64,000 bases of DNA from IMG/VR virus record IMGVR_UViG_3300042540_001822, positions 155,476 through 219,475 of that record. The stretch is one strand, 5' to 3'. The notes beneath the pieces are model-generated. The model did no database searches and had not been told where the DNA came from. It was given only the letters and a program-made list of their open reading frames with translations. Positions 18,868 through 48,769 of this stretch are shown here, in pieces. The position numbers and the translations under genes were made by a program. Position 1 is the stretch's first letter; each line of letters starts with the position of its first letter.

Positions 18868-18889
18868 TTTCAATTATTTAAAATTTTTG

Positions 18890-18974
18890 CGGAGAGGGAG
18901 GGATTCGAACCCCCGGATCCTTGCGGATCGGCTGTTTTCAAGACAGCTCTCGTAAACCACTTGAGTACCTCTCC
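18890..18974 (-). tRNA. tRNA-Ser(UGA)
   Basis: GGAGAGG acceptor, GCTGT-CTTGAAA-ACAGC anticodon arm, long variable arm, GGTTCGAATCC T-loop; CCA not encoded. Confidence 0.95.
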
Positions 18975-20400: not shown

Positions 20401-20431
20401 AAAAAAAAAAGTTTGTCCGAAGACAAACTTT
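20401..20431 (-). terminator. Intrinsic terminator after tmRNA
   Basis: AAAGTTTGTC-TTCG-GACAAACTTT then U-run. Confidence 0.85.
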
Positions 20432-20435
20432 GTTG

Positions 20436-20872
20436 TGGAGCTGGGCGGATTCGAACCGCCGTCCTGTTAGGTAGATCTTGGAAACTCATTCACAGGCTTA
20501 GTCTATTTTTATAAACAGACAAATCTTTACCTCCTAGTTTTTGACTGTGATAGGAGATAATCCACAGCGTCTTCCCTTACAGCGATCTGAAGGGTATTGG
20601 GCCGGAGCCCGCAGGGTTACTGAGGGTCGACGAATTTTGTGGTACTATTAACCCTTTTTCCCACAATTGTGACTTTCTGTTCCTGGGCGTCACCTCCCGG
20701 TGTTTAGGCTGCCAAGGCAACTTCAACCGACTCCACTGAACCTAGTCCAGCAAGAGCAAAAAATGGATTTTCGCCATTTGAAAAGTACTTAGGATATTTA
20801 GGTGCTTCCAAAGCTAGCACCGCCTGCATCATGTCAAAGAACTTGTTCCTCCAGTCGATTCCTGTCAGCCCC
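20436..20872 (-). ncRNA. ssrA: tmRNA
   Basis: 5' GGGGCTGACAGGAATCGAC; 3' GGCGGTTCGAATCCGCCCAGCTCCA; G3.U alanine pair; tag frame 20775-20704 GENPFFALAGLGSVESVEVALAA*. Confidence 0.93.
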
Positions 20873-20882
20873 GAAGTTGTGT

Positions 20883-20909
20883 TTATATATGTACGAAAAA
20901 AAAAGTTTC
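20883..20909 (-). promoter_or_regulatory. Putative promoter of tmRNA
   Basis: GAAAC-N16-ATATAA about 10 nt upstream of tmRNA 5' end. Confidence 0.45.
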
Positions 20910-21300
20910 ATAATTTGACCTCAAATCTTTTCGCCATAGCATCTAACTTGTCAGAAGGAACTCCGTGAACATTTTCACCCATGTGTCGGTTTTCTACGAT
21001 CGCGGTGGAAACCAGATAACCGAATTTTTCGGCCATTTGAAAATAAGGTTCCATTTCCCATTCCTGTGTAAATGTATTTGATACGATAATTAAAGGGTGG
21101 TCCAAAAACATCCAATCTTTAACCATTGTTTGGCACCACTCGTGAGCCTGCTTTAATTTGTCACCTTGGAATTTATATTCTCCATCTACCATGAAAAATT
21201 GGTCAGCTTCAACGTGAAAAACCCCATAACCTCCTAACCTTTTGGCCAAAGTTGATTTACCAGATCCGGGCAAACCCCGGAGTAAAAGAAGTGTATTCAT
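20908..21300 (-). CDS. AAA_33/N4BP2-like P-loop kinase
   Basis: LLRGLPGSGKST, EADQFF, IVSNTF, HGVP. Confidence 0.85.
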   Translation of the reverse strand: MNTLLLLRGLPGSGKSTLAKRLGGYGVFHVEADQFFMVDGEYKFQGDKLKQAHEWCQTMVKDWMFLDHPLIIVSNTFTQEWEMEPYFQMAEKFGYLVSTAIVENRHMGENVHGVPSDKLDAMAKRFEVKL

Positions 21301-21313
21301 GATTTAAATTTGT

Positions 21314-21988
21314 TTAATTGGTTTTCTTTGTGATTACCCCATCGATGATTCCATAGGCCTTGGCTTCCTCGGCATCGAGCCAAAAATCACGGGTTGCGTC
21401 CTCCTGAACCTTTGCCGGATCCTTACCACAAAAATCACCAAGTAGTTCAAATAGGATTTTATTCACCTTTTCCCATTCTTGAAAGTCAATTTTTGCGTCC
21501 TGGATGTTTCCTTCGAAGCCTCCAGAAGATTGGTGCAACATCACCTTAGAGAAGCGAAGAGAAAATCTTTTTCCCTTGGTCCCAGCACCTAATAGCACAG
21601 ATCCCATAGAAGCTGCCATGCCCGTGTTGATTGTGGAGATGTCAGATTTAATGTACTGCATGACATCCACCATTGAAAGTCCAGATTTAACCGATCCCCC
21701 TGGTGAATCGATGTGCATTGTGATGTCCCTTTCATCAACGGAATCTAAAAACATCAGCTGTGCCTGAACTACTGTCGACATGGAATCACGGACCGGACCT
21801 GCCACCCATAAAATTCTGTCCATCATGAGTCTTGAAAAAATGTCCAATTGTGTCACCCGAAGTTCTCTTTCTTCTAGAATGTAGGGGGTTAGTGAGCTTT
21901 GAACTTGTTTTTCATAGTAGTCCAAAGTGGAGGAACTAATTCCTTGAGATAGGGAGAATTTTTGAAATTCCGAAAAAAGTTTTGACAT
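21314..21988 (-). CDS. clpP: ATP-dependent Clp protease proteolytic subunit
   Basis: DIFSRLMMDRI, IDSPGGSV, AASMG (Ser), MLHQ (His), RDFWLDAEEAKAYGIID. Confidence 0.95.
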   Translation of the reverse strand: MSKLFSEFQKFSLSQGISSSTLDYYEKQVQSSLTPYILEERELRVTQLDIFSRLMMDRILWVAGPVRDSMSTVVQAQLMFLDSVDERDITMHIDSPGGSVKSGLSMVDVMQYIKSDISTINTGMAASMGSVLLGAGTKGKRFSLRFSKVMLHQSSGGFEGNIQDAKIDFQEWEKVNKILFELLGDFCGKDPAKVQEDATRDFWLDAEEAKAYGIIDGVITKKTN

Positions 21989-22020
21989 GGTTTTAATTTA
22001 AAATGTAAAATTTTCTAACC

Positions 22021-22052
22021 CAAATATACGAACAAGAGAACTTAAAATTCCC
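22021..22052 (-). promoter_or_regulatory. Putative promoter of clpP
   Basis: GGAATTTT-N14-GTATATTTG; also contains Bacteroidota-type TAnnTTTG. Confidence 0.45.
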
Positions 22053-22187
22053 TTACTTGTGATAATTAATTAACCTTTGATGATTCCTTTTAAAAAGGTT
22101 TCTTTAGCAATACACTCATCCTCAAATTCGTTCAAAAGCATGAACATGAAACCAAACAAAAATATGGCCCAAAACATGCTATGAAAT

Positions 22188-22499
22188 TTAAATCAAAGAG
22201 GTGTTTACTGTTCTATTTGCAACCCCGGCTATTCCTGGAAAAGAAGAAAAAACGTTGGTCATATCTTTAATCGTCGTGTCCCAAGGAGAATGGCTTTCGT
22301 TAAATCTGACCATAGGATAAAATACTGGTGATTCGTAATTTCCACCCCGGATTGGCATTTTGCACCTGACTGGCGGGTGACTAACCGCCTGTAAATAAAA
22401 AACTGCAGATCCATCTGGAGTAAATCGAATTTCGGACACCTCAATGTCACTTCTCTCTTTTCCAGTGAGAAAATTTTTTAACTCGTCTCTGAAGTTCAT
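22188..22499 (-). CDS. Hypothetical protein
   Basis: ORF with ATGA overlap to trx. Confidence 0.55.
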   Translation of the reverse strand: MNFRDELKNFLTGKERSDIEVSEIRFTPDGSAVFYLQAVSHPPVRCKMPIRGGNYESPVFYPMVRFNESHSPWDTTIKDMTNVFSSFPGIAGVANRTVNTSLI

Positions 22500-22780
22500 A
22501 ATTCTGAAGTGTGTTTTTGAATGAGATCCTGATAAAAACCTTCGGGTTTCAAACCTTTAACGTTTTCTAAAACTGAATTTTCTTTCATAAATAAAACCGT
22601 AGGCAAAGATCTAATTCCAAATTCCGCTGTTCTTTCCTTATTTTCATCAACGTTAATTTTCACAATTTCAACGTTTGGATTTTTTGATTTTAAATTTTCT
22701 AAAATTGGATTAAGCATACGGCAGGGTCCACACCATTCGGCATAAAAATCTAAAATTGTAAGTGGAGTAGGGTTTGACAT
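22496..22780 (-). CDS. trxA: Thioredoxin
   Basis: DFYAEWCGPCR, INVDE, IRSLPT. Confidence 0.95.
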   Translation of the reverse strand: MSNPTPLTILDFYAEWCGPCRMLNPILENLKSKNPNVEIVKINVDENKERTAEFGIRSLPTVLFMKENSVLENVKGLKPEGFYQDLIQKHTSEL

Positions 22781-22825
22781 AAAAGTTTTTAAAATATTAG
22801 ATAAAATAGAAAAAATTGTTTCTTT

Positions 22826-23146
22826 TCAATAAACAATAGTTTGTGTCATATCTGGATTTGTTCTGTAAATTACCTCGGGACCAGGTGACATGATAACTGA
22901 AAGTTCATCTGACAGTGTTTGCAAACTTTGGATAAAATTTTGAACGTCGTCTTTTTTGGAAGCGGGAAAATTAAAATGAGTCATAACATCATTAGTCAGG
23001 GACTCAATAGAATCATCAAATTGCCCGGCATCATGAAAATCCATGTCCTTTTCATATTTTGAAACGAAGTCTTTGATTTCGTCCTGTTCTACCTGTGACA
23101 AAGAAAGATTCGACACAAAATCATCAAATTCTAGAATTCTTTTCAT
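22826..23146 (-). CDS. Hypothetical protein with CTS-like N-terminus
   Basis: MKRILEFDDFVS. Confidence 0.6.
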   Translation of the reverse strand: MKRILEFDDFVSNLSLSQVEQDEIKDFVSKYEKDMDFHDAGQFDDSIESLTNDVMTHFNFPASKKDDVQNFIQSLQTLSDELSVIMSPGPEVIYRTNPDMTQTIVY

Positions 23147-23161
23147 ATGACAAATTTTTTT

Positions 23162-23174
23162 GATATATATATAT
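23162..23174. promoter_or_regulatory. TA-run/GATATATA motif in divergent intergenic region
   Basis: gatatatatatatt between divergent ORFs 23146(-) and 23195(+). Confidence 0.5.
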
Positions 23175-23194
23175 TATAACCAAATAAATACAAA

Positions 23195-23641
23195 ATGGAA
23201 AAACATGATAAGGATAAAGATTTCTTGATCCAAGATTCGACAGAAGAATTTGAAACAACTGATTTGGATTCAAATGATGAATTCACCCTTGAAGAGGAGG
23301 ATTTTGACGAAGAGCCAGCAGAAGATATCGTAATTCAACCCCAAGAAGATAAAGACGAGGATGAAGATGATGATGATGAGGAAGATGATGACGAAGATCA
23401 GAAATCATCTGACACCGAAGATGAAATTTCCATGCAATATTACATGGATGATGAACCAGGAAAACCGGAGTTTAAAAAATCTAATAAAGAAGAAGATGAT
23501 GGGGAAGATGATGAGGATGATGAAGATGAATATATTTCTTTAAGTCACTCAGGGGAAGAACACAAAACCCCACAGAAATCCTCAAAAGGAACAAAGATAC
23601 TTTCATTTGAAGATTTTGTAGATGGTCTGGACGAGGATTAA
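23195..23641 (+). CDS. Extremely acidic low-complexity protein
   Basis: Long D/E tracts; C-terminal KILSFEDFVDG. Confidence 0.65.
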   Translation: MEKHDKDKDFLIQDSTEEFETTDLDSNDEFTLEEEDFDEEPAEDIVIQPQEDKDEDEDDDDEEDDDEDQKSSDTEDEISMQYYMDDEPGKPEFKKSNKEEDDGEDDEDDEDEYISLSHSGEEHKTPQKSSKGTKILSFEDFVDGLDED

Positions 23642-23820
23642 TCCTCTGAAGTAGTACTTCTTCCAAGATCTCTACGGATCAGTTTTCTGACATAGTGAGA
23701 AATAGAAACTGGGGGATCACCTTTAGTTAAAGCTTGTTTCGAGATTTTTTTCCCAAGTTCTTCTAGATCTTCGCTAGAAAGCAACACTTGGATTTTTTCG
23801 GATTTTTCTTCTTTTGCCAT
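23638..23820 (-). CDS. Ribbon-helix-helix-like DNA-binding protein
   Basis: KIQVLLSSEDLEEL...SISHYVRKLIRRDL. Confidence 0.55.
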   Translation of the reverse strand: MAKEEKSEKIQVLLSSEDLEELGKKISKQALTKGDPPVSISHYVRKLIRRDLGRSTTSED

Positions 23821-23833
23821 GATTGATTTTTTT

Positions 23834-25306
23834 TTAAATTGATTCGAATTTTATACCTCCATGAGGCATTCCTTTTGTTTTAAGTGGTCTGTAACCTTTC
23901 ATTTCGTCTGTAACTACGAATGCCTTATGAGGATTAACCATTACCCCCATTCTTTTCATTAAACCTCTATTTGCCAAAAAAGGAGTGCTTTTTTGAATTC
24001 TGTCAGTAGGTGCAACCTTAACATCGGAAATTTTAACTCCATTGAGCATCAAATCCAATGATATAATAGGTCTTTTTTCTTTTTCCCTTCCAATTTCAGT
24101 GTTTGTGTAACCTATAATTTCATCTGCGAAAGTATTTTCACCTATTTTCCAATATAGAACTCCATTTTTTTCCTCCAATTCATCAGCGTGAATCGAAGAG
24201 GCTGAAGATCCATTACCAGTGTCAAATTTTGCCACCATTTTACCAATTCTGGGAATATCTAAAGTTTCTAAATAGCCAACCTCCATTTTGCTATAGCTCC
24301 AATTATTCTTGTCTATAACATAGTCAATAACATCTCCAACAATAGGTCTTCCAATTGCCTGAGAAATACCTTCTGTTCCAGGAGAAGAATTGACCTCCAA
24401 AATGTAGGGTTTACCCGATTCAGCATCAATCATGATGTCTACTCCACACCAGTGGCTTCCGACTGCATTAGCGGCTTCACAAGCGAGAGCTGCTGTTTCT
24501 TCGTCGATATCATAGGATGAAACCTGCCCTCCCAAAGAGTAATTAGTTCTAAAGTCTTTTTCAACAGCTTCTCTTTTCATGGAACCGAGAATGGTGTAAT
24601 TTCCTTTTTTTGAAATAAGTGGATCGAATCTTTTAACGATTACCTGAATTCTAAGATCAAAATTAGAATTAATCTTTTCTTGTATCAAAATTTCCTTTTC
24701 CGGGTCTAGCTTTGCTATGGTCTGATAAACCGACTTTAAAGAAGCATAAGAATCAACAATCGAAACTCCAATTCCCTGGGTCCCAGACAGTAATTTCATA
24801 ACGACAGGAAATTTACCTCCAATCTGCTCCAAAGCGGAATCTAGATTGTCTTCCCCGTTGACTAATGCGTATCTAGGAACGGGTAAACCCTCACCCTCCA
24901 AAATCCGGGAGGTAAGAAATTTGCTTTCACAAATCTCAATTGATTCTAAAGAGTTAACGCAAAAATATCTAGATGCCTCCAAATCTCTCATGATTTGTTT
25001 GGTGTAGGAGTTGGTAATAACTCCTCTCCGAGGAATAATTGCAGTTTTATCTGGTTTAATTAGAATTTCTTTGCCATCTTTTTTTCCTTCACGAACCATG
25101 TGTCCGTTGTAAATTTTTTCCAACGTTATGTTGTTTATGTCCACCACGTTGCAGACGATTCCCCGATTTTCACACTCGGCCATAAAAGATTTAGAGGTAG
25201 GGCTGGGTTTGGCGGTACCGGACAGGATAAGAATTTCTACCCCATCTGAGGACTCGGATTCATTCAAGAAGGTTGAAAAATTAACAACAGAAGGAGCAAA
25301 GGACAT
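23834..25306 (-). CDS. rimK: RimK-family ATP-grasp ligase fused to retropepsin-like (RimB/Zn_protease) domain
   Basis: CESKFLT..L...GLPVPR, PVVMKLLSGTQGIGV, IQEKI..FDLR, FRTNYSLGG, GVDI, LEVNSSPG; C-terminal KFDTGNG; start at MSFAPS. Confidence 0.85.
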   Translation of the reverse strand: MSFAPSVVNFSTFLNESESSDGVEILILSGTAKPSPTSKSFMAECENRGIVCNVVDINNITLEKIYNGHMVREGKKDGKEILIKPDKTAIIPRRGVITNSYTKQIMRDLEASRYFCVNSLESIEICESKFLTSRILEGEGLPVPRYALVNGEDNLDSALEQIGGKFPVVMKLLSGTQGIGVSIVDSYASLKSVYQTIAKLDPEKEILIQEKINSNFDLRIQVIVKRFDPLISKKGNYTILGSMKREAVEKDFRTNYSLGGQVSSYDIDEETAALACEAANAVGSHWCGVDIMIDAESGKPYILEVNSSPGTEGISQAIGRPIVGDVIDYVIDKNNWSYSKMEVGYLETLDIPRIGKMVAKFDTGNGSSASSIHADELEEKNGVLYWKIGENTFADEIIGYTNTEIGREKEKRPIISLDLMLNGVKISDVKVAPTDRIQKSTPFLANRGLMKRMGVMVNPHKAFVVTDEMKGYRPLKTKGMPHGGIKFESI

Positions 25307-25329
25307 GAAAGTGGGAAGAAATTTTTCCT

Positions 25330-25337
25330 TATATATC
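25330..25337 (-). promoter_or_regulatory. GATATATA late-promoter-like motif
   Basis: Upstream of rimK start 25306. Confidence 0.55.
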
Positions 25338-25965
25338 ACTTTTTTTCAACAAACTCTGTAAAATAATGTTGATCTGTCTCGAAATTTGTTTTATTTTCTA
25401 CCGAATAAACATTCATATCAATTTTGTAACCAGGATTTTTTTCTATCCTCTTAAATGTCCACGCATTATCCATCCAAATTATTCTATTATTTGGATAGAT
25501 GAAATAATTTCCATTGTCCATCTTGAAAACGTGTCCACATTTGTGTTCTGGTGTTTCTGAAAAATTGGTATCTAATAAGGATCTATTTTCAAAAGACCAA
25601 TCAAGAGTAAAAAGGTAAATCCCCTGTCTTTTTAAACCCGAAATTGAAATTAAATCTGCTCTTAATCCGCTCATTCTTGCCCTCACCTGAACATCGATGT
25701 ACGAGCTAAAGCAATCCCAATAAATATGCTCGCTTAAAGGCAATAATTCAGCATCCTTTTTCCAACAAAAAGCGTTAATGGGTCTTCTTGTCCAATTGAC
25801 CCCATTTTCCAAAAAAGCTTCAAATAATGGAACTCTTTTTTCAATCGAAGCAACCGAATGAACATCTGCTAAGGTAAAATCACCGTGTCCTTTTTCGTGG
25901 TTAAATAAAAATTCATTTCTGATGAAACAGGTCAGAGTTGGGATGTTGTGATTTAGATAGGGCAT
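25336..25965 (-). CDS. Conserved phage hypothetical protein
   Basis: YLNHNIP, WDCFS, TLDW, EHKC, PNNRI; recalled as common in large phages (not verified). Confidence 0.65.
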   Translation of the reverse strand: MPYLNHNIPTLTCFIRNEFLFNHEKGHGDFTLADVHSVASIEKRVPLFEAFLENGVNWTRRPINAFCWKKDAELLPLSEHIYWDCFSSYIDVQVRARMSGLRADLISISGLKRQGIYLFTLDWSFENRSLLDTNFSETPEHKCGHVFKMDNGNYFIYPNNRIIWMDNAWTFKRIEKNPGYKIDMNVYSVENKTNFETDQHYFTEFVEKK

Positions 25966-26418: not shown

Positions 26419-27573
26419 TTAAAAAAGAGTATTAATCATGAAAAGGTTGGGAGAAATCGGGTGGTGACCCATTACTTCTATGAAGCGGTTGATTGGATCT
26501 AAAATTGTTTTGGTGAACTGTTGGTCTAAATCCACCGGAGGAGCATACTCGTAAGGGTAATTTCCTTGAGAATAGGCAAAAACATTGTTTTCCTGTGGAT
26601 TATTGGTTTTAACAAAGTAAAATCTAACTTTTTCTCCGCTTCCTAACAGGGGATATTTGTCCTTGTACTTCGAGTTGTTTAGTATGTAATTATGATAGCC
26701 AGAAGCTCTGACGTGAATAGGGGTAGCCTTGGCAAATTCGAAACCTGTGGTGTCGTTTAAAATGAACTTCTCGTAGTTGTTAACCGAAATAGCCAAGGCG
26801 ATCCGTTCTGGTTCCTGGGCTTTAAAATCTTTCTTGATTGATTTTAACTCTGTAACGAACTCCCTAATGTTGAAAGACCTACCTTTCGTTAAAATAAACT
26901 TAGTTAAGTACATTAGCTTCTCACGAACAAAGGCAGGTGTGCCTCCTTTTATCATCTCAACTCCAGTGGTTTTGATGTTGCTTAGAGGTTCGAACTCCAC
27001 ACCATCTGAGTAAACTGTGTTCGTAACATATTTTTTCTTGCCAAGAAAGATGGCATTAATCGACAAGGTCTCAAGTTCGAAATCCTGATAGTTTTCCGTG
27101 TTCCATTTTTTGGCGTAAATCTCAAAGCACTTTTTAAGATAACCTTTTAATCTAAATTCATTGATTTTTAAAATCAATTCCTTTGGATCTCCTTGCCAGT
27201 TACAAGACGCCACGACTTCCTGAAATGTTACATAATTGGAGTCAGTATCACCATAGATAGTTAAGGGCCGGTGTACCTTCTTGACATCGGTGACTCCTAG
27301 TTTTTCATGAAGATCGACATCATCGTGCCAGAAATCGTGAAAGTATCTATGAATAATTTTTTCTGAATACTTGATTAAATCCTGTCCCTGAAGAGTAACT
27401 GCTTCTGCAACGTCTGTATTAAAGCAAGCAAAGAAATTATTTCCTACCGCTCCATAGATGGAGTTCATCGTTAACTTTACGGCTTGTTCCTCGTTCTTGA
27501 GCTCATTCTTTAGGGAGGTGAGCTCTTCTATTTTTAATTTTAGTTCTTTCGCATTTAGATTATGTGGTTCCAT
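26419..27573 (-). CDS. Family B DNA polymerase, C-terminal subunit (gp43B-like)
   Basis: KLTMNSIYG (motif B), YGDTDS (motif C), KKKY, TTGVEM; no exonuclease or motif A. Confidence 0.92.
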   Translation of the reverse strand: MEPHNLNAKELKLKIEELTSLKNELKNEEQAVKLTMNSIYGAVGNNFFACFNTDVAEAVTLQGQDLIKYSEKIIHRYFHDFWHDDVDLHEKLGVTDVKKVHRPLTIYGDTDSNYVTFQEVVASCNWQGDPKELILKINEFRLKGYLKKCFEIYAKKWNTENYQDFELETLSINAIFLGKKKYVTNTVYSDGVEFEPLSNIKTTGVEMIKGGTPAFVREKLMYLTKFILTKGRSFNIREFVTELKSIKKDFKAQEPERIALAISVNNYEKFILNDTTGFEFAKATPIHVRASGYHNYILNNSKYKDKYPLLGSGEKVRFYFVKTNNPQENNVFAYSQGNYPYEYAPPVDLDQQFTKTILDPINRFIEVMGHHPISPNLFMINTLF

Positions 27574-27591
27574 TCTTGTTCCCAATCTAAT

Positions 27592-47008: not shown

Positions 47009-48412
47009 TTAGGACATTTTTTTCAATTGTTTCTCCAACTGGTCGATTTCTATTTGGAGTTTTAACATTTTATCCTTGGCCATTCTTCTTTTGGCGTAAA
47101 GGTCTTTAATTATCGACTTCAAAATTGGATCTTCGTCGTCTCCTCCGAACACAGCTCCAGAGGAAGTTTTAATCCAACTTTCTTTTATGTCCAATAAATT
47201 TTTGCCTTTGTAAACTTCAGGAGAGATTCCCCACTGCACAATGGCGTTGGGATATAGAGAAGCAAAGTCATAACATGCTACCCATTCGTGCAAACCAACA
47301 ATTGGATCTTTGACATATGCACCGGCAAATTTGACGTGATTTTCATCCTTTCTGGTTTGGACAAAGACCTGCTTTCGTTCGAGAAATTTTCTCATCATCA
47401 TTACCTCGGTAGACCACACTGGGGAAAGAGCCCTATTGATTTCAACACCGTTTAAATTTGCTATCTTAAAGAAGGTCAGCATTGTCTTCAACTTCTTGTC
47501 GATATAATGAACCAGTGCACAGTCAATGGCGTTGTAAAAAATGAATTTACTGAAATCTGATTGGTAAAGAGTCCGTAGTGTTCCCTCGTAATGAATTTTC
47601 TTTAATCCGGTTGCTTTTTCTGCCACATAATCCAAACGATTACTTTCCTTAATTTTGATTACCCTGTCCCACTTCTTGTAAATTTCAAGATAGTCGATCA
47701 TGAGGATGTGGGCTGGAAGTTGATTTTGTCCAATAAAATAACCACTCGGAGACATGATTTTTGGATCTATTCCAAGCCTTTTGGCTCTATTAATAAGATA
47801 AGGCCAGTCGTATCCAAACCAGTTCCAACCTGTGATCACCGACATCTTAGATGCTATATCCTTGAAGAAGGTGTAAAGCATGTCATACTCAGACTCGAAC
47901 TTTTTGTACTTGAAGTCCCAGGTGTCTCCTTTTTCTTGTAAATACTCGTTGACCTGTTGGTGAATCAATCCCTGTTGTTCGGCATCCAAATCGTCCAGCC
48001 CCAGGACGATCAACTTGCATTTATCTGTGGCTATTCCTATGGACAAAATTTTATTTTTTGCCTTCTCAGTATCCAATGAATCTTTCATCTCGTCGGTCAT
48101 CTCGACCTCGATGTCCACGAAGAATTTTTTTGGGGTTTGAAATTCCCAAAGTGGTTTAGTCAGTTCTGGATCCGCCTCTTCGAGCAATTGTAAAATTCGA
48201 TATTTGTCGTATTTTGTGTTTTTATATTTCTTAATTGAAGATCCCTCCCAATTTTTCCAAACTTTATCCCGATCCCTATCGCTGTGTGAACAAATCTGCC
48301 AGACGAATCTTTCCTCTGGTGGAATCGGGACGTTAACAAATGTAATGTTTCCTTCCGGAGAAAAAGTCGAAATTTTGAGTTCTTCTCCGTTATTTTCAAT
48401 ATCTACTATCAT
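47009..48412 (-). CDS. Family B DNA polymerase, N-terminal subunit (3'-5' exonuclease + motif A; gp43A-like)
   Basis: FVDIE (ExoI), GWNWFGYD (ExoII), YNAID (ExoIII), YDFASLYP (motif A); ends after first fingers helix; start MIVDIE. Confidence 0.92.
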   Translation of the reverse strand: MIVDIENNGEELKISTFSPEGNITFVNVPIPPEERFVWQICSHSDRDRDKVWKNWEGSSIKKYKNTKYDKYRILQLLEEADPELTKPLWEFQTPKKFFVDIEVEMTDEMKDSLDTEKAKNKILSIGIATDKCKLIVLGLDDLDAEQQGLIHQQVNEYLQEKGDTWDFKYKKFESEYDMLYTFFKDIASKMSVITGWNWFGYDWPYLINRAKRLGIDPKIMSPSGYFIGQNQLPAHILMIDYLEIYKKWDRVIKIKESNRLDYVAEKATGLKKIHYEGTLRTLYQSDFSKFIFYNAIDCALVHYIDKKLKTMLTFFKIANLNGVEINRALSPVWSTEVMMMRKFLERKQVFVQTRKDENHVKFAGAYVKDPIVGLHEWVACYDFASLYPNAIVQWGISPEVYKGKNLLDIKESWIKTSSGAVFGGDDEDPILKSIIKDLYAKRRMAKDKMLKLQIEIDQLEKQLKKMS

Positions 48413-48429
48413 AAATGAAATCCTGAATG

Positions 48430-48437
48430 GATATATA
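48430..48437 (+). promoter_or_regulatory. GATATATA late-promoter-like motif
   Basis: Plus-strand copy immediately upstream of start 48443. Confidence 0.55.
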
Positions 48438-48442
48438 CACTT

Positions 48443-48769
48443 ATGTTGGACAATCTTAAAAGTTTCGGAAATTTTGTAACTGAAAACTGGAGCGCATTTG
48501 CTCCGGGAAGCGTAGCTGTGCCTGGAGAATGGTACAAGGACAATGTTAATTCCAGAAATTATCGTCCTGCCTACACCCAAATGCCTAGAGTTGTAGACGA
48601 TCTTTACAACACTACGGATTTATATTCTTATTTAGACGAGTTAGCAGAAGAAGAAGAATTTCAAAAAATGCTTACCAAAGATCACAAGAATTCCAAGAAG
48701 ATTTTAAAGTACGTGAAACAAAGAATTCACGAGACACTTTCAGGCAAGGCCAAAACAGAGTCTAAGTAG
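48443..48769 (+). CDS. Hypothetical protein with CTS-like N-terminus
   Basis: MLDNLKSFGNFVTEN. Confidence 0.6.
   Translation: MLDNLKSFGNFVTENWSAFAPGSVAVPGEWYKDNVNSRNYRPAYTQMPRVVDDLYNTTDLYSYLDELAEEEEFQKMLTKDHKNSKKILKYVKQRIHETLSGKAKTESK

What the first reader, a model, noticed from the sequence alone, without database searches (positions are those of the whole stretch)
20436..21988. Phage tmRNA with an extended, apparently doubled tag located next to a phage ClpP
Seen: the tag reads GENPFFALAGLGSVESVEVALAA (23 aa). The first ~10 residues resemble a short Bacteroidota tag (GENNYALAA type) whose end FALAG is followed by 13 more residues ending in a second ALAA degron. clpP lies ~440 nt upstream on the same strand. 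Established: tmRNA tags stalled peptides for ClpXP/ClpP degradation. Inference: a phage-owned trans-translation and proteolysis module, possibly countering tRNA/mRNA-cleaving defences or rerouting tagged proteins to the phage ClpP.
Basis: partly seen in the sequence, partly recalled or inferred. Interest (0 to 1): 0.6.

Follow-up and report, generated by a model that had tools for sequence, protein, structure and literature searches.

The report
Jumbo-phage tmRNA with long tag
A roughly 220-kb phage, probably of Bacteroidota, carries its own ribosome-rescue RNA (tmRNA) whose degradation tag is 23 residues against 8-10 in the likely host phylum; such long tags are conserved across its phage clade, which often also carries SmpB, ClpP and a Clp ATPase.

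Summary
Window 20433-20872 (-) is a full-length tmRNA (Rfam 67.2 bits, cut-off 47). ARAGORN's different tag call is a failed guess.

The resume context matches Bacteroidota tmRNAs. Synonymous changes among relatives show that this frame is under protein-level selection.

A true ClpP-type protease with an intact Ser/His/Asp triad lies 441 nt upstream on the same strand. A small kinase-like ORF sits between them.

New findings:
- The genome is a 219-kb jumbo-phage record from a large clade.
- 27 of 48 relatives carry a tmRNA over the cut-off, and all 13 near-complete ones have a full-length match.
- 21 of the 22 tags I could place are 21-25 residues; one is 10. All 54 sampled host-phylum tags are 8-10.
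- Relatives often carry SmpB and a ClpA/C-like ATPase. This genome has neither.
- The tight ClpP-tmRNA adjacency is unique to this genome. Other pairings recur: ClpP next to SmpB, and a Clp ATPase next to the tmRNA.

The "doubled tag" idea is neither shown nor excluded as a duplication. The tag reads better as a host-type tag with about 14 conserved extra residues inside it. Coupling to ClpP is inferred, and expression is untested. I rate it a new variant of a known kind.

The parts
20433..20872 (-). Phage tmRNA (ssrA) gene, one-piece, 440 nt
   Evidence: Rfam RF00023 scores 67.2 bits against a cut-off of 47. ARAGORN finds the same gene. Covariation in 7 relatives includes G3:U70 and compensatory pairs in the T-arm, helix 2 and PK1.
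20704..20775 (-). Tag reading frame: resume codon GGC to stop TAA, 23 residues ending in ALAA
   Evidence: Read from the sequence and the frame tables. The resume context is host-like.
20789..20825 (-). Pseudoknot 1 region; it ends 12-13 nt before the resume codon
   Evidence: Rfam alignment. Three PK1 stem pairs show changes on both sides. The coordinates are approximate.
20408..20431 (-). Intrinsic-terminator-like hairpin plus T-run directly after the tmRNA 3' end
   Evidence: The consensus scan finds 10 pairs and a T-run. It is also visible in the sequence.
20908..21300 (-). 130-aa P-loop kinase-like ORF (AAA_33, resembling the N-terminal half of polynucleotide kinases) between clpP and the tmRNA
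   Evidence: Pfam AAA_33 at 3.7e-12. PHROGs phrog_2071 'ATPase' at 2.9e-39 and phrog_505 'polynucleotide kinase' at 3.2e-8. It has no counterpart at this locus in relatives.
21314..21988 (-). ClpP-type serine protease, 224 aa, with Ser127/His152/Asp201
   Evidence: Pfam CLP_protease at 1.3e-58. NCBIfam ClpP model NF011091 scores 249 bits, against 66 bits for the head-maturation model. It aligns over its full length to solved ClpPs.
22021..22028 (-). Candidate Bacteroidota-type -7 promoter box (TATATTTG), 33 nt before the clpP start; weak evidence
   Evidence: Pattern match. The motif is not enriched in the window (69 found, 77 expected), so this is only a candidate.

Best explanation
This is a working, phage-encoded, one-piece tmRNA of Bacteroidota type in a jumbo phage.

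Shown:
- The RNA has every tmRNA part: an alanine-identity acceptor stem with G3:U70, a T-arm, helix 2, PK1, a resume codon in the host-type context, and a tag frame that ends in ALAA.
- The tag frame is under protein-level selection.
- Long tags of 21-25 residues are the rule in this phage clade, while tags in the likely host phylum are 8-10 residues.

Inferred:
- The RNA is made during infection. In this genome it may be made as the tail of a clpP-kinase-tmRNA transcript, since only 35 nt and no terminator precede it and a terminator follows it.
- It is charged by host AlaRS and delivered by host SmpB and EF-Tu, because this genome has no smpB.
- It frees ribosomes stalled on broken or stop-less mRNAs and adds Ala plus 23 residues.
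- The host-like C-terminal ALAA sends the product to a ClpX/ClpA/C-type unfoldase with ClpP.
- The conserved inner stretch is aromatic and hydrophobic, then has a Gly, then is acidic. It is a second recognition element for an adaptor or another protease. That would make phage-tagged proteins distinguishable from host-tagged ones, as the long Mycoplasma tag does for Lon.
- The neighbouring phage ClpP supplies or replaces the proteolytic chamber and must dock on a host unfoldase.

The confidence given is for the whole statement. I put the shown part (a functional phage tmRNA with this 23-residue tag) at about 0.85, and the inferred coupling to ClpP and the second-determinant role at about 0.35.
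For: RNA identity and structure.

Tag frame. ARAGORN independently calls a 24-residue tag at the same position in relatives.

Clade-wide conservation: 27 of 48 relatives score over the Rfam cut-off, and all 13 records at least 90% complete have a full-length match, two of them just below the cut-off. The 22 placed tags all resume at nt 91-99. 21 are 21-25 residues and one (L101) is 10. Two further near-identical tmRNAs (L094/L096) read about 31 residues, but their resume codon was only inferred by eye. The 25 phage tmRNAs fall on one side of a branch from the 54 host-phylum tmRNAs, with SH-aLRT 91.

Host tags are short: 54 of 54 are 8-10 residues.

ClpP is of the true ClpP type with an intact triad. 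Its nearest cellular relatives are Bacteroidota at 48% identity.

The link between proteolysis and trans-translation genes recurs in different arrangements: ClpP next to the tmRNA here; a ClpA/C-like ATPase about 0.1 kb from the tmRNA in G042-44; and clpP directly followed by smpB in G002 and G003, and about 0.9 kb away in G006.

There is no integrase, so the gene is not an attachment-site relic.

Precedent for a long hydrophobic tag acting as a protease-specificity switch: PMC8403727, which cites Gur and Sauer 2008.
Against: - There are no expression data.
- This genome holds no SmpB, ClpX, ClpA/C-type ATPase or Lon, although about 12% of it is missing.
- The close adjacency is unique to this genome, and the nearest sisters lack ClpP in the records held. 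ClpP is therefore not obligatory for the tmRNA.
- The upstream promoter is not identified. The one motif match is no better than chance.
- Part of the tag's conservation could come from RNA structure. In subgroup B the synonymous signal is weak (127 against 300), and there the case rests mainly on the absence of in-frame stops.
- The host assignment is indirect.
Confidence: 0.6

Rival explanations
1. The tmRNA serves ribosome rescue only. The phage simply tops up tmRNA supply when host transcription is shut off or mRNAs are cut, the fate of tagged proteins does not matter, and the ClpP next door is an unrelated accessory gene.
For: Adjacency to ClpP is not conserved and sister phages lack ClpP. 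This genome has no unfoldase. Earlier papers suggest rescue or maintenance roles for phage tmRNAs (PMC9004378, PMC7162821).
Against: The tag peptide is under purifying selection along its whole length, including two-base Leu codon swaps at tag codons 8 and 21. Its length and inner motif are kept across subgroups. Proteolysis genes sit beside trans-translation genes in three different arrangements.
Confidence: 0.2
2. The tag arose. A short host-type tag (GEN..ALAA) lost its stop or was duplicated, and translation now runs on to a second ALAA. The inner ALAG is a relic of the first degron.
For: In this subgroup both halves look host-like at codon level. The first is GGC GAA AAT ... GCT CTT GCT G.. 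and the last is GCC TTG GCA GCC TAA, which compare with host tags such as those in L159 and L161. In the Rfam alignment the model's helix 5, where a short tag would normally end, falls on the first ALAG segment.
Against: There is no nucleotide repeat beyond what the shared residues require. The other subgroups have inner segments of the INAFG or VNESV type. The inner segment is conserved with synonymous changes, so it is now functional rather than a relic. The long tag is found in every major subgroup sampled, so any such event would predate their split.
Confidence: 0.2
3. The 'ClpP' is the phage's head-maturation (prohead) protease, as PHROGs would label it, and has nothing to do with tagged proteins.
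For: The best PHROGs hits are 'head maturation protease' families, led by phrog_94 at 120 bits. Many phage ClpP-fold proteins are prohead proteases (one search lists several hundred weaker phage hits).
Against: The cellular ClpP model scores 249 bits against 66 for the head-maturation model, which needs 120. The protein aligns over its full length to solved ClpPs and to Bacteroidota ClpPs at 48% identity. Its neighbours are thioredoxin, RimK-like ligase, kinase, RNR, topoisomerase and polymerase genes, not portal or capsid genes. An 85%-complete sister phage lacks it, which an essential capsid protease should not allow.
Confidence: 0.07
4. The tmRNA gene is a passenger or relic picked up from a host, for example through integration at ssrA, and is not used by the phage.
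For: Prophages often integrate at ssrA and can carry fragments of it (PMC9004378).
Against: The gene is full length. Its structure is kept by compensatory changes. It is conserved across a large clade and separates from host tmRNAs. There is no integrase. It has a terminator of its own.
Confidence: 0.03

Closest known systems
Bacteroidota one-piece tmRNA (tags such as GENNYALAA)
   Same: The resume context and first three codons are the same ('taaat GGC GAA AAT'). So are the C-terminal ALAA, the G3:U70 acceptor stem, the T-arm, PK1 and the overall one-piece layout.
   Different: The tag is 23 residues against 8-10. The gene is 440 nt against 349-402. The Rfam score is 67 bits against 93-198. 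It sits on the phage side of the single branch that separates phage from host tmRNAs.
Known phage tmRNAs (Bacillus phage G, mycobacteriophage Bxz1 group, Melnitz/pelagiphage two-piece tmRNAs, tmRNA and SmpB in huge phages)
   Same: All are phage-borne ssrA genes, often in large genomes that also carry other translation genes (PMC4131195, PMC9004378, PMC7162821, PMC12484599).
   Different: Those reports give ARAGORN calls only. Phage G's reported tag is 13 residues. None of the papers I found describes a clade-wide long tag or a recurrent link to ClpP, SmpB and a Clp ATPase. ARAGORN finds only 12 of the 32 tmRNA loci in this clade and miscalls several tags.
Mycoplasma long ssrA tag (27 residues) recognised by Lon
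   Same: It is a long tag rich in hydrophobic and aromatic residues that carries recognition information beyond the last three residues (PMC8403727).
   Different: The phage tag keeps a ClpX-type ALAA end. No Lon gene was found in this phage. The protease that reads the inner segment is unknown.
ClpP genes of huge phages (Lak phages, uncultured phage LR745206)
   Same: They are cellular-type ClpPs in jumbo phages of Bacteroidota, 47-65% identical to this one.
   Different: LR745206 has no detectable tmRNA. The genomes are 540-640 kb, and the ClpP similarity is well below that within this clade (74-83%).

Membership tests
tmRNA (Rfam RF00023, one-piece) | Covariance-model score over the curated gathering score across the full model | tested here: met
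   67.2 bits against 47, model positions 1-374 of 374.
tmRNA (Rfam RF00023, one-piece) | tRNA-like domain: 7-bp acceptor stem with G3:U70 (alanine identity), a T-arm and no anticodon arm | tested here: met
   ARAGORN's drawing of the tRNA-like domain. G:U is present in 7 of 7 relatives, and T-arm pairs change on both sides.
tmRNA (Rfam RF00023, one-piece) | PK1 followed after about 10-14 nt by a resume codon and a short open frame ending in a hydrophobic xAA degron and a stop | tested here: met
   PK1 is aligned and covaries. A 12-13 nt spacer is followed by GGC at nt 98, ALAA and TAA.
tmRNA (Rfam RF00023, one-piece) | Tag frame is translated (protein-level selection) | tested here: met
   67 synonymous against 56 non-synonymous in frame, compared with 10/113 and 4/114 plus stops in the other frames. 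This is comparative evidence, not an experiment.
tmRNA (Rfam RF00023, one-piece) | Works with SmpB; is expressed and charged with alanine | not testable with these tools
   There is no smpB in this genome. Relatives carry one.
ClpP (ATP-dependent Clp protease proteolytic subunit, MEROPS S14) | Full-length CLP_protease domain with the Ser-His-Asp triad | tested here: met
   Pfam at 1.3e-58, profile positions 6-181 of 182. Ser127, His152 and Asp201 align with solved ClpPs.
ClpP (ATP-dependent Clp protease proteolytic subunit, MEROPS S14) | Score over NCBIfam's equivalog cut-off for ClpP | tested here: not met
   NF011091 scores 249 bits against a cut-off of 361, and TIGR00493 scores 193 against 308.6. 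It is therefore a divergent ClpP-type protein, not a certified equivalog.
ClpP (ATP-dependent Clp protease proteolytic subunit, MEROPS S14) | Forms a barrel that docks on a Clp ATPase | not tested
   This genome has no unfoldase gene. No complex prediction was run.
ClpP-related phage head-maturation protease | Score over the NF045542 cut-off and a position next to portal and capsid genes | tested here: not met
   66.4 bits against a cut-off of 120. The neighbours are metabolic and replication genes. The gene is absent from sister phage records.

The most novel reading that the evidence does not exclude
The conserved inner part of the long tag is a phage-specific address. Proteins tagged by the phage tmRNA would then be recognised by a phage-controlled Clp machine (phage ClpP with a phage or captured host unfoldase, or a phage adaptor) rather than by the host's ordinary ssrA pathway. 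That would give these jumbo phages a private quality-control and protein-recycling route during infection. It might also serve as a counter to RNA-cutting defences.
Probability: 0.2. Interest if true: 0.75.

Novelty: new variant of a known kind. Interest (0 to 1): 0.55.

Why it matters
Phage tmRNAs have been listed in surveys but hardly studied, and what they do for the phage is an open question. In this clade the tag has been kept at two to three times the host length, with a conserved inner motif. The same phages repeatedly place ClpP, SmpB or a Clp ATPase beside trans-translation genes.

This makes a clear experiment possible: does the extra tag segment change which protease or adaptor reads the tag? 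A yes would show that phages run their own protein-disposal route. It would also provide orthogonal degradation tags for Bacteroidota.

There is a practical point too. ARAGORN, the tool used in the published surveys, misses most tmRNAs of this clade and miscalls their tags, so phage tmRNAs are probably under-counted.

Tried and rejected
- ARAGORN's tag at nt 228-296 is rejected. The program flags it as not identified, it lies far from PK1, and that frame is not conserved.
- blastn of the tmRNA against 50,697 phage records found nothing.
- ARAGORN on 85 related loci found only the window's own gene. Infernal through the genome search was needed.
- The best database ClpP match, LR745206 (635 kb), has no tmRNA. 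This clade is therefore not simply that published group.
- There is no bS21 gene, so I could not link the phage to the published bS21 phage clades.
- The Bacteroidota -7 box TAnnTTTG is not enriched in the window (69 found, 77 expected). Several relatives have a TAAATTTG just before their tmRNA, but this genome does not.
- I ran no complex prediction, because I do not claim a specific protein pair binds.
- I made no large protein searches, because the family scans settled the proteins.
Full report
**1. What is there**

ARAGORN and Rfam both find one tmRNA on the minus strand at window 20433-20872. The Rfam score is 67.2 bits against a curated cut-off of 47, and the match covers the whole model.

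The gene starts 35 nt after the stop of the upstream ORF. It is followed at once by a 10-bp hairpin and a T-run at 20408-20431.

The window is the last 64 kb of a 219,475-bp IMG/VR virus record, estimated 88% complete, with GC 35.8%. The record holds only three tRNAs plus this tmRNA. It has no integrase. Every ORF of 200 aa or more in the window lies on the minus strand. These ORFs include ribonucleotide reductase, topoisomerase II subunits, a helicase and a family-B DNA polymerase. So this is a jumbo phage, and the tmRNA sits in its replication and auxiliary-gene region.

**2. The tag**

Read from the sequence, tmRNA nt 98-169 (window 20775 to 20704) run GGC GAA AAT through GCA GCC TAA. ARAGORN instead reports a peptide at nt 228-296 and marks it 'Tag not identified'. 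I reject that call for four reasons.

- The Rfam alignment puts the model's resume codon on the GGC.
- PK1 ends 12-13 nt before the GGC, which is the usual spacing.
- The context 'taaat GGC GAA AAT' is letter for letter that of Bacteroidota tmRNAs whose tag is GENNYALAA.
- Comparison with relatives supports this frame. In the six closest distinct tmRNAs, in-frame codon differences are 67 synonymous and 56 non-synonymous. They include CTT/TTG leucine swaps at tag codons 8 and 21. The other two frames give 10/113 and 4/114 and hold 7 and 10 stops.

In several relatives an in-frame stop lies six codons before the GGC. This limits how far upstream translation could begin. In more distant relatives ARAGORN itself calls a 24-residue tag at the same position.

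**3. The RNA is under selection**

I aligned seven distinct tmRNAs of this subgroup. Of 103 predicted pairs, 22 keep pairing through changes on both sides. These lie in helix 2, PK1, the T-arm and later helices. The acceptor stem keeps G3:U70 in all seven. This is not a relic.

**4. The neighbours**

- Window 21314-21988 (-) encodes a 224-aa ClpP-type protease (Pfam 1.3e-58). The best NCBIfam model is a ClpP equivalog of 221 positions, at 249 bits. That is below its strict cut-off of 361. The ClpP-related head-maturation model scores only 66 bits against a cut-off of 120.
- The protein aligns end to end with solved ClpPs. Ser127, His152 and Asp201 are in place.
- PHROGs would name it 'head maturation protease'. 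I do not follow that, because of the scores above, the non-structural neighbours, and its absence from an 85%-complete sister phage.
- Between clpP and the tmRNA lies a 130-aa P-loop kinase-like ORF at 20908-21300.

**5. Relatives**

The ClpP finds more than 590 loci in IMG/VR, mostly on contigs of 90-430 kb. I searched 48 of those records with the tmRNA model.

- 27 hold a tmRNA over the cut-off.
- All 13 records that are at least 90% complete have a full-length match. Two of these are a little below the cut-off.
- Together with three phage contigs binned into Bacteroidota MAGs, I read 22 distinct tags.
- All 22 resume at nt 91-99 after an A-rich 'AAAT/AAAC/AAGT'-type context.
- 21 of the 22 are 21-25 residues long.
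- A further tmRNA (L101) has a short 10-residue tag.
- One more pair (L094/L096) looks like about 31 residues, but I placed its resume codon only by eye.

The subgroups differ in sequence but share a plan. The plan is Gly plus two polar residues, then an aromatic and hydrophobic stretch, then a Gly or Pro turn, then an acidic patch, then a hydrophobic-Ala-x-Ala-Ala end. Examples are GKKSVWDAINSFGTPVTEVEYAYAA and GNTNFWSLVNESVNAPVTEELLAA.

The window's own subgroup has ten records with tags of 23-24 residues. In a quick tree that leaves out the insert columns, the 25 phage tmRNAs fall on one side of a branch from 54 tmRNAs of the Bacteroidota phylum, with SH-aLRT 91. No outgroup from another phylum was included, so the source of the phage gene is not proven.

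**6. Is a long tag normal in the host lineage?**

The host is not known directly. The indirect evidence points to Bacteroidota:

- The nearest cellular ClpPs are from Psychroflexus, Olivibacter and Flavobacteriaceae, at 48% identity.
- Related phage contigs have been binned into Saprospirales, Flavobacteriaceae and 'Bacteroidetes' MAGs.
- The resume codon and the first tag residues are of Bacteroidota type.
- GC is low.

I sampled 151 genomes of that phylum. 144 have a tmRNA over the cut-off. I read the tags of 54 of them, taking 35 of the best-scoring (including five from genomes reached through the ClpP loci) and 19 from the lower range. All are 8-10 residues, and the genes are 349-402 nt.

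**7. 'Doubled' tag?**

In this subgroup both ends of the tag look host-like at codon level. The Rfam model's helix 5, where a short tag would end, aligns to the first ALAG segment.

But the two ALA segments share no more bases than the residues require. Other subgroups have no ALAA-like inner segment. The inner segment is itself conserved through synonymous changes.

The safest description is a host-type tag, GEN at the start and ALAA at the end, with about 14 conserved extra residues in between. Whether this arose by stop loss, duplication or stepwise insertion cannot be told from these data.

**8. A module?**

This genome has no SmpB, ClpX, AAA_2 or classic AAA unfoldase, or Lon. About 12% of it is missing.

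Among the relatives, SmpB is in 16 of 48 records and in 11 of 13 near-complete ones. A 660-824-aa ORF encoding a ClpA/C/B-like two-ring ATPase is in 31 of 48.

The 441-nt ClpP-tmRNA spacing is unique to this genome. Elsewhere the two genes are 5.6-375 kb apart, usually on the same strand.

The locus is collinear with sister phages G042-44, whose tmRNA is 92% identical. The exception is the segment beside the tmRNA. Here it holds the kinase-like ORF and clpP. There it holds an 821-aa Clp ATPase plus a 338-aa ORF on the other strand, and those records contain no clpP.

In G002 and G003, smpB follows clpP by 30-37 nt, and in G006 by about 0.9 kb. So proteolysis genes sit beside trans-translation genes in three different arrangements. 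I take this as moderate support for a functional link. It is not proof, and my sample was chosen through ClpP.

**9. Mechanism**

Shown: a complete, conserved tmRNA with a long, selected tag that ends in a ClpX-type degron, and an intact ClpP next to it.

Inferred: it is made during infection, possibly as the 3' end of a clpP-kinase-tmRNA transcript. It is charged and delivered by host factors. It rescues stalled ribosomes and tags their products.

More speculative: the inner segment is a second recognition element, as in the Mycoplasma tag that switched to Lon (PMC8403727). The phage ClpP would then work with a host unfoldase.

A counter-defence role against RNA-cutting systems fits the kinase-like ORF and an RNA-ligase-family gene elsewhere in the genome. 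It is untested.

**10. Known or new?**

Phage tmRNAs are known from phage G, the Bxz1 group, two-piece tmRNAs of marine myophages, and tmRNA with SmpB in huge phages (PMC4131195, PMC9004378, PMC7162821, PMC12484599). Cellular-type ClpP is known in Lak-like phages.

I found no paper that describes a clade-wide long tag or the recurrent link to Clp genes. The library does not cover most subscription journals.

ARAGORN, which those surveys used, detects only 12 of the 32 tmRNA loci in this clade.

**Verdict**

It is a new variant of a known kind, and the functional story is still inference.

Noticed in passing
L230:10342-13828 (sister phage G043), matching window 20873-22187: At the same collinear locus beside the tmRNA, the three closest sister phages carry an 821-aa ClpA/C-like two-ring ATPase and a 338-aa ORF on the opposite strand. 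This genome has the kinase-like ORF and clpP there instead. The sister records hold no clpP, and this genome holds no Clp ATPase. It looks like a cassette swap between two halves of a Clp protease.
   Followed up: partly
G002:C1:111726-112816, G003:C1:110331-111419 and G006:C1:121965-123924 (relatives): In these relatives smpB lies directly downstream of clpP, with a gap of 30-37 nt, or about 0.9 kb in G006. This is a clpP-smpB gene pair.
   Followed up: partly
window 20908-21300 (-); G000:C1:144467-145003: The 130-aa ORF between clpP and the tmRNA resembles the kinase half of polynucleotide kinases (phrog_505, weak; phrog_2071, strong). It has no counterpart at this locus in relatives. An RNA_ligase-family gene (PF09414, 89.6 bits) lies about 11 kb before the window. 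Together they hint at RNA repair.
   Followed up: partly
window 47009-48580 (-) and 26419-27585 (-): The family-B DNA polymerase appears split into two ORFs about 19 kb apart. One holds the exonuclease domain and the start of the polymerase domain, and the other holds the rest of the polymerase domain.
   Followed up: no
window 18889-18974 (-): tRNA-Ser (anticodon UGA) lies 1.5 kb downstream of the tmRNA. The whole record has only three tRNAs (Met, Arg, Ser).
   Followed up: no
window 22496-25339 (-): A thioredoxin and a 501-aa RimK-like ATP-grasp protein, the latter with a weak C-terminal match to the RimB-type 'Zn_protease' domain, lie upstream of clpP. Their order is conserved in relatives (L230, L233, L238).
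   Followed up: no
L086-L114 and L163-L165 (relatives' tmRNA loci): ARAGORN detects 12 of the 32 tmRNAs that Infernal finds in this clade. It misses those 92% identical to the window's. In six of its 12 detections it picks a short tag starting far downstream of PK1. Surveys based on ARAGORN probably under-count phage tmRNAs.
   Followed up: yes
L093, L095, L163 and L098, upstream of their tmRNAs: These relatives have a terminator hairpin and then TAAATTTG (TAAATTAG in L163 and CAAATTCG in L098) shortly before the tmRNA 5' end. TAAATTTG matches the Bacteroidota -7 promoter consensus as I recall it. The window's own tmRNA lacks both elements and abuts the upstream ORF.
   Followed up: partly
window 1-64000: All 43 ORFs of 200 aa or more lie on the minus strand.
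   Followed up: no
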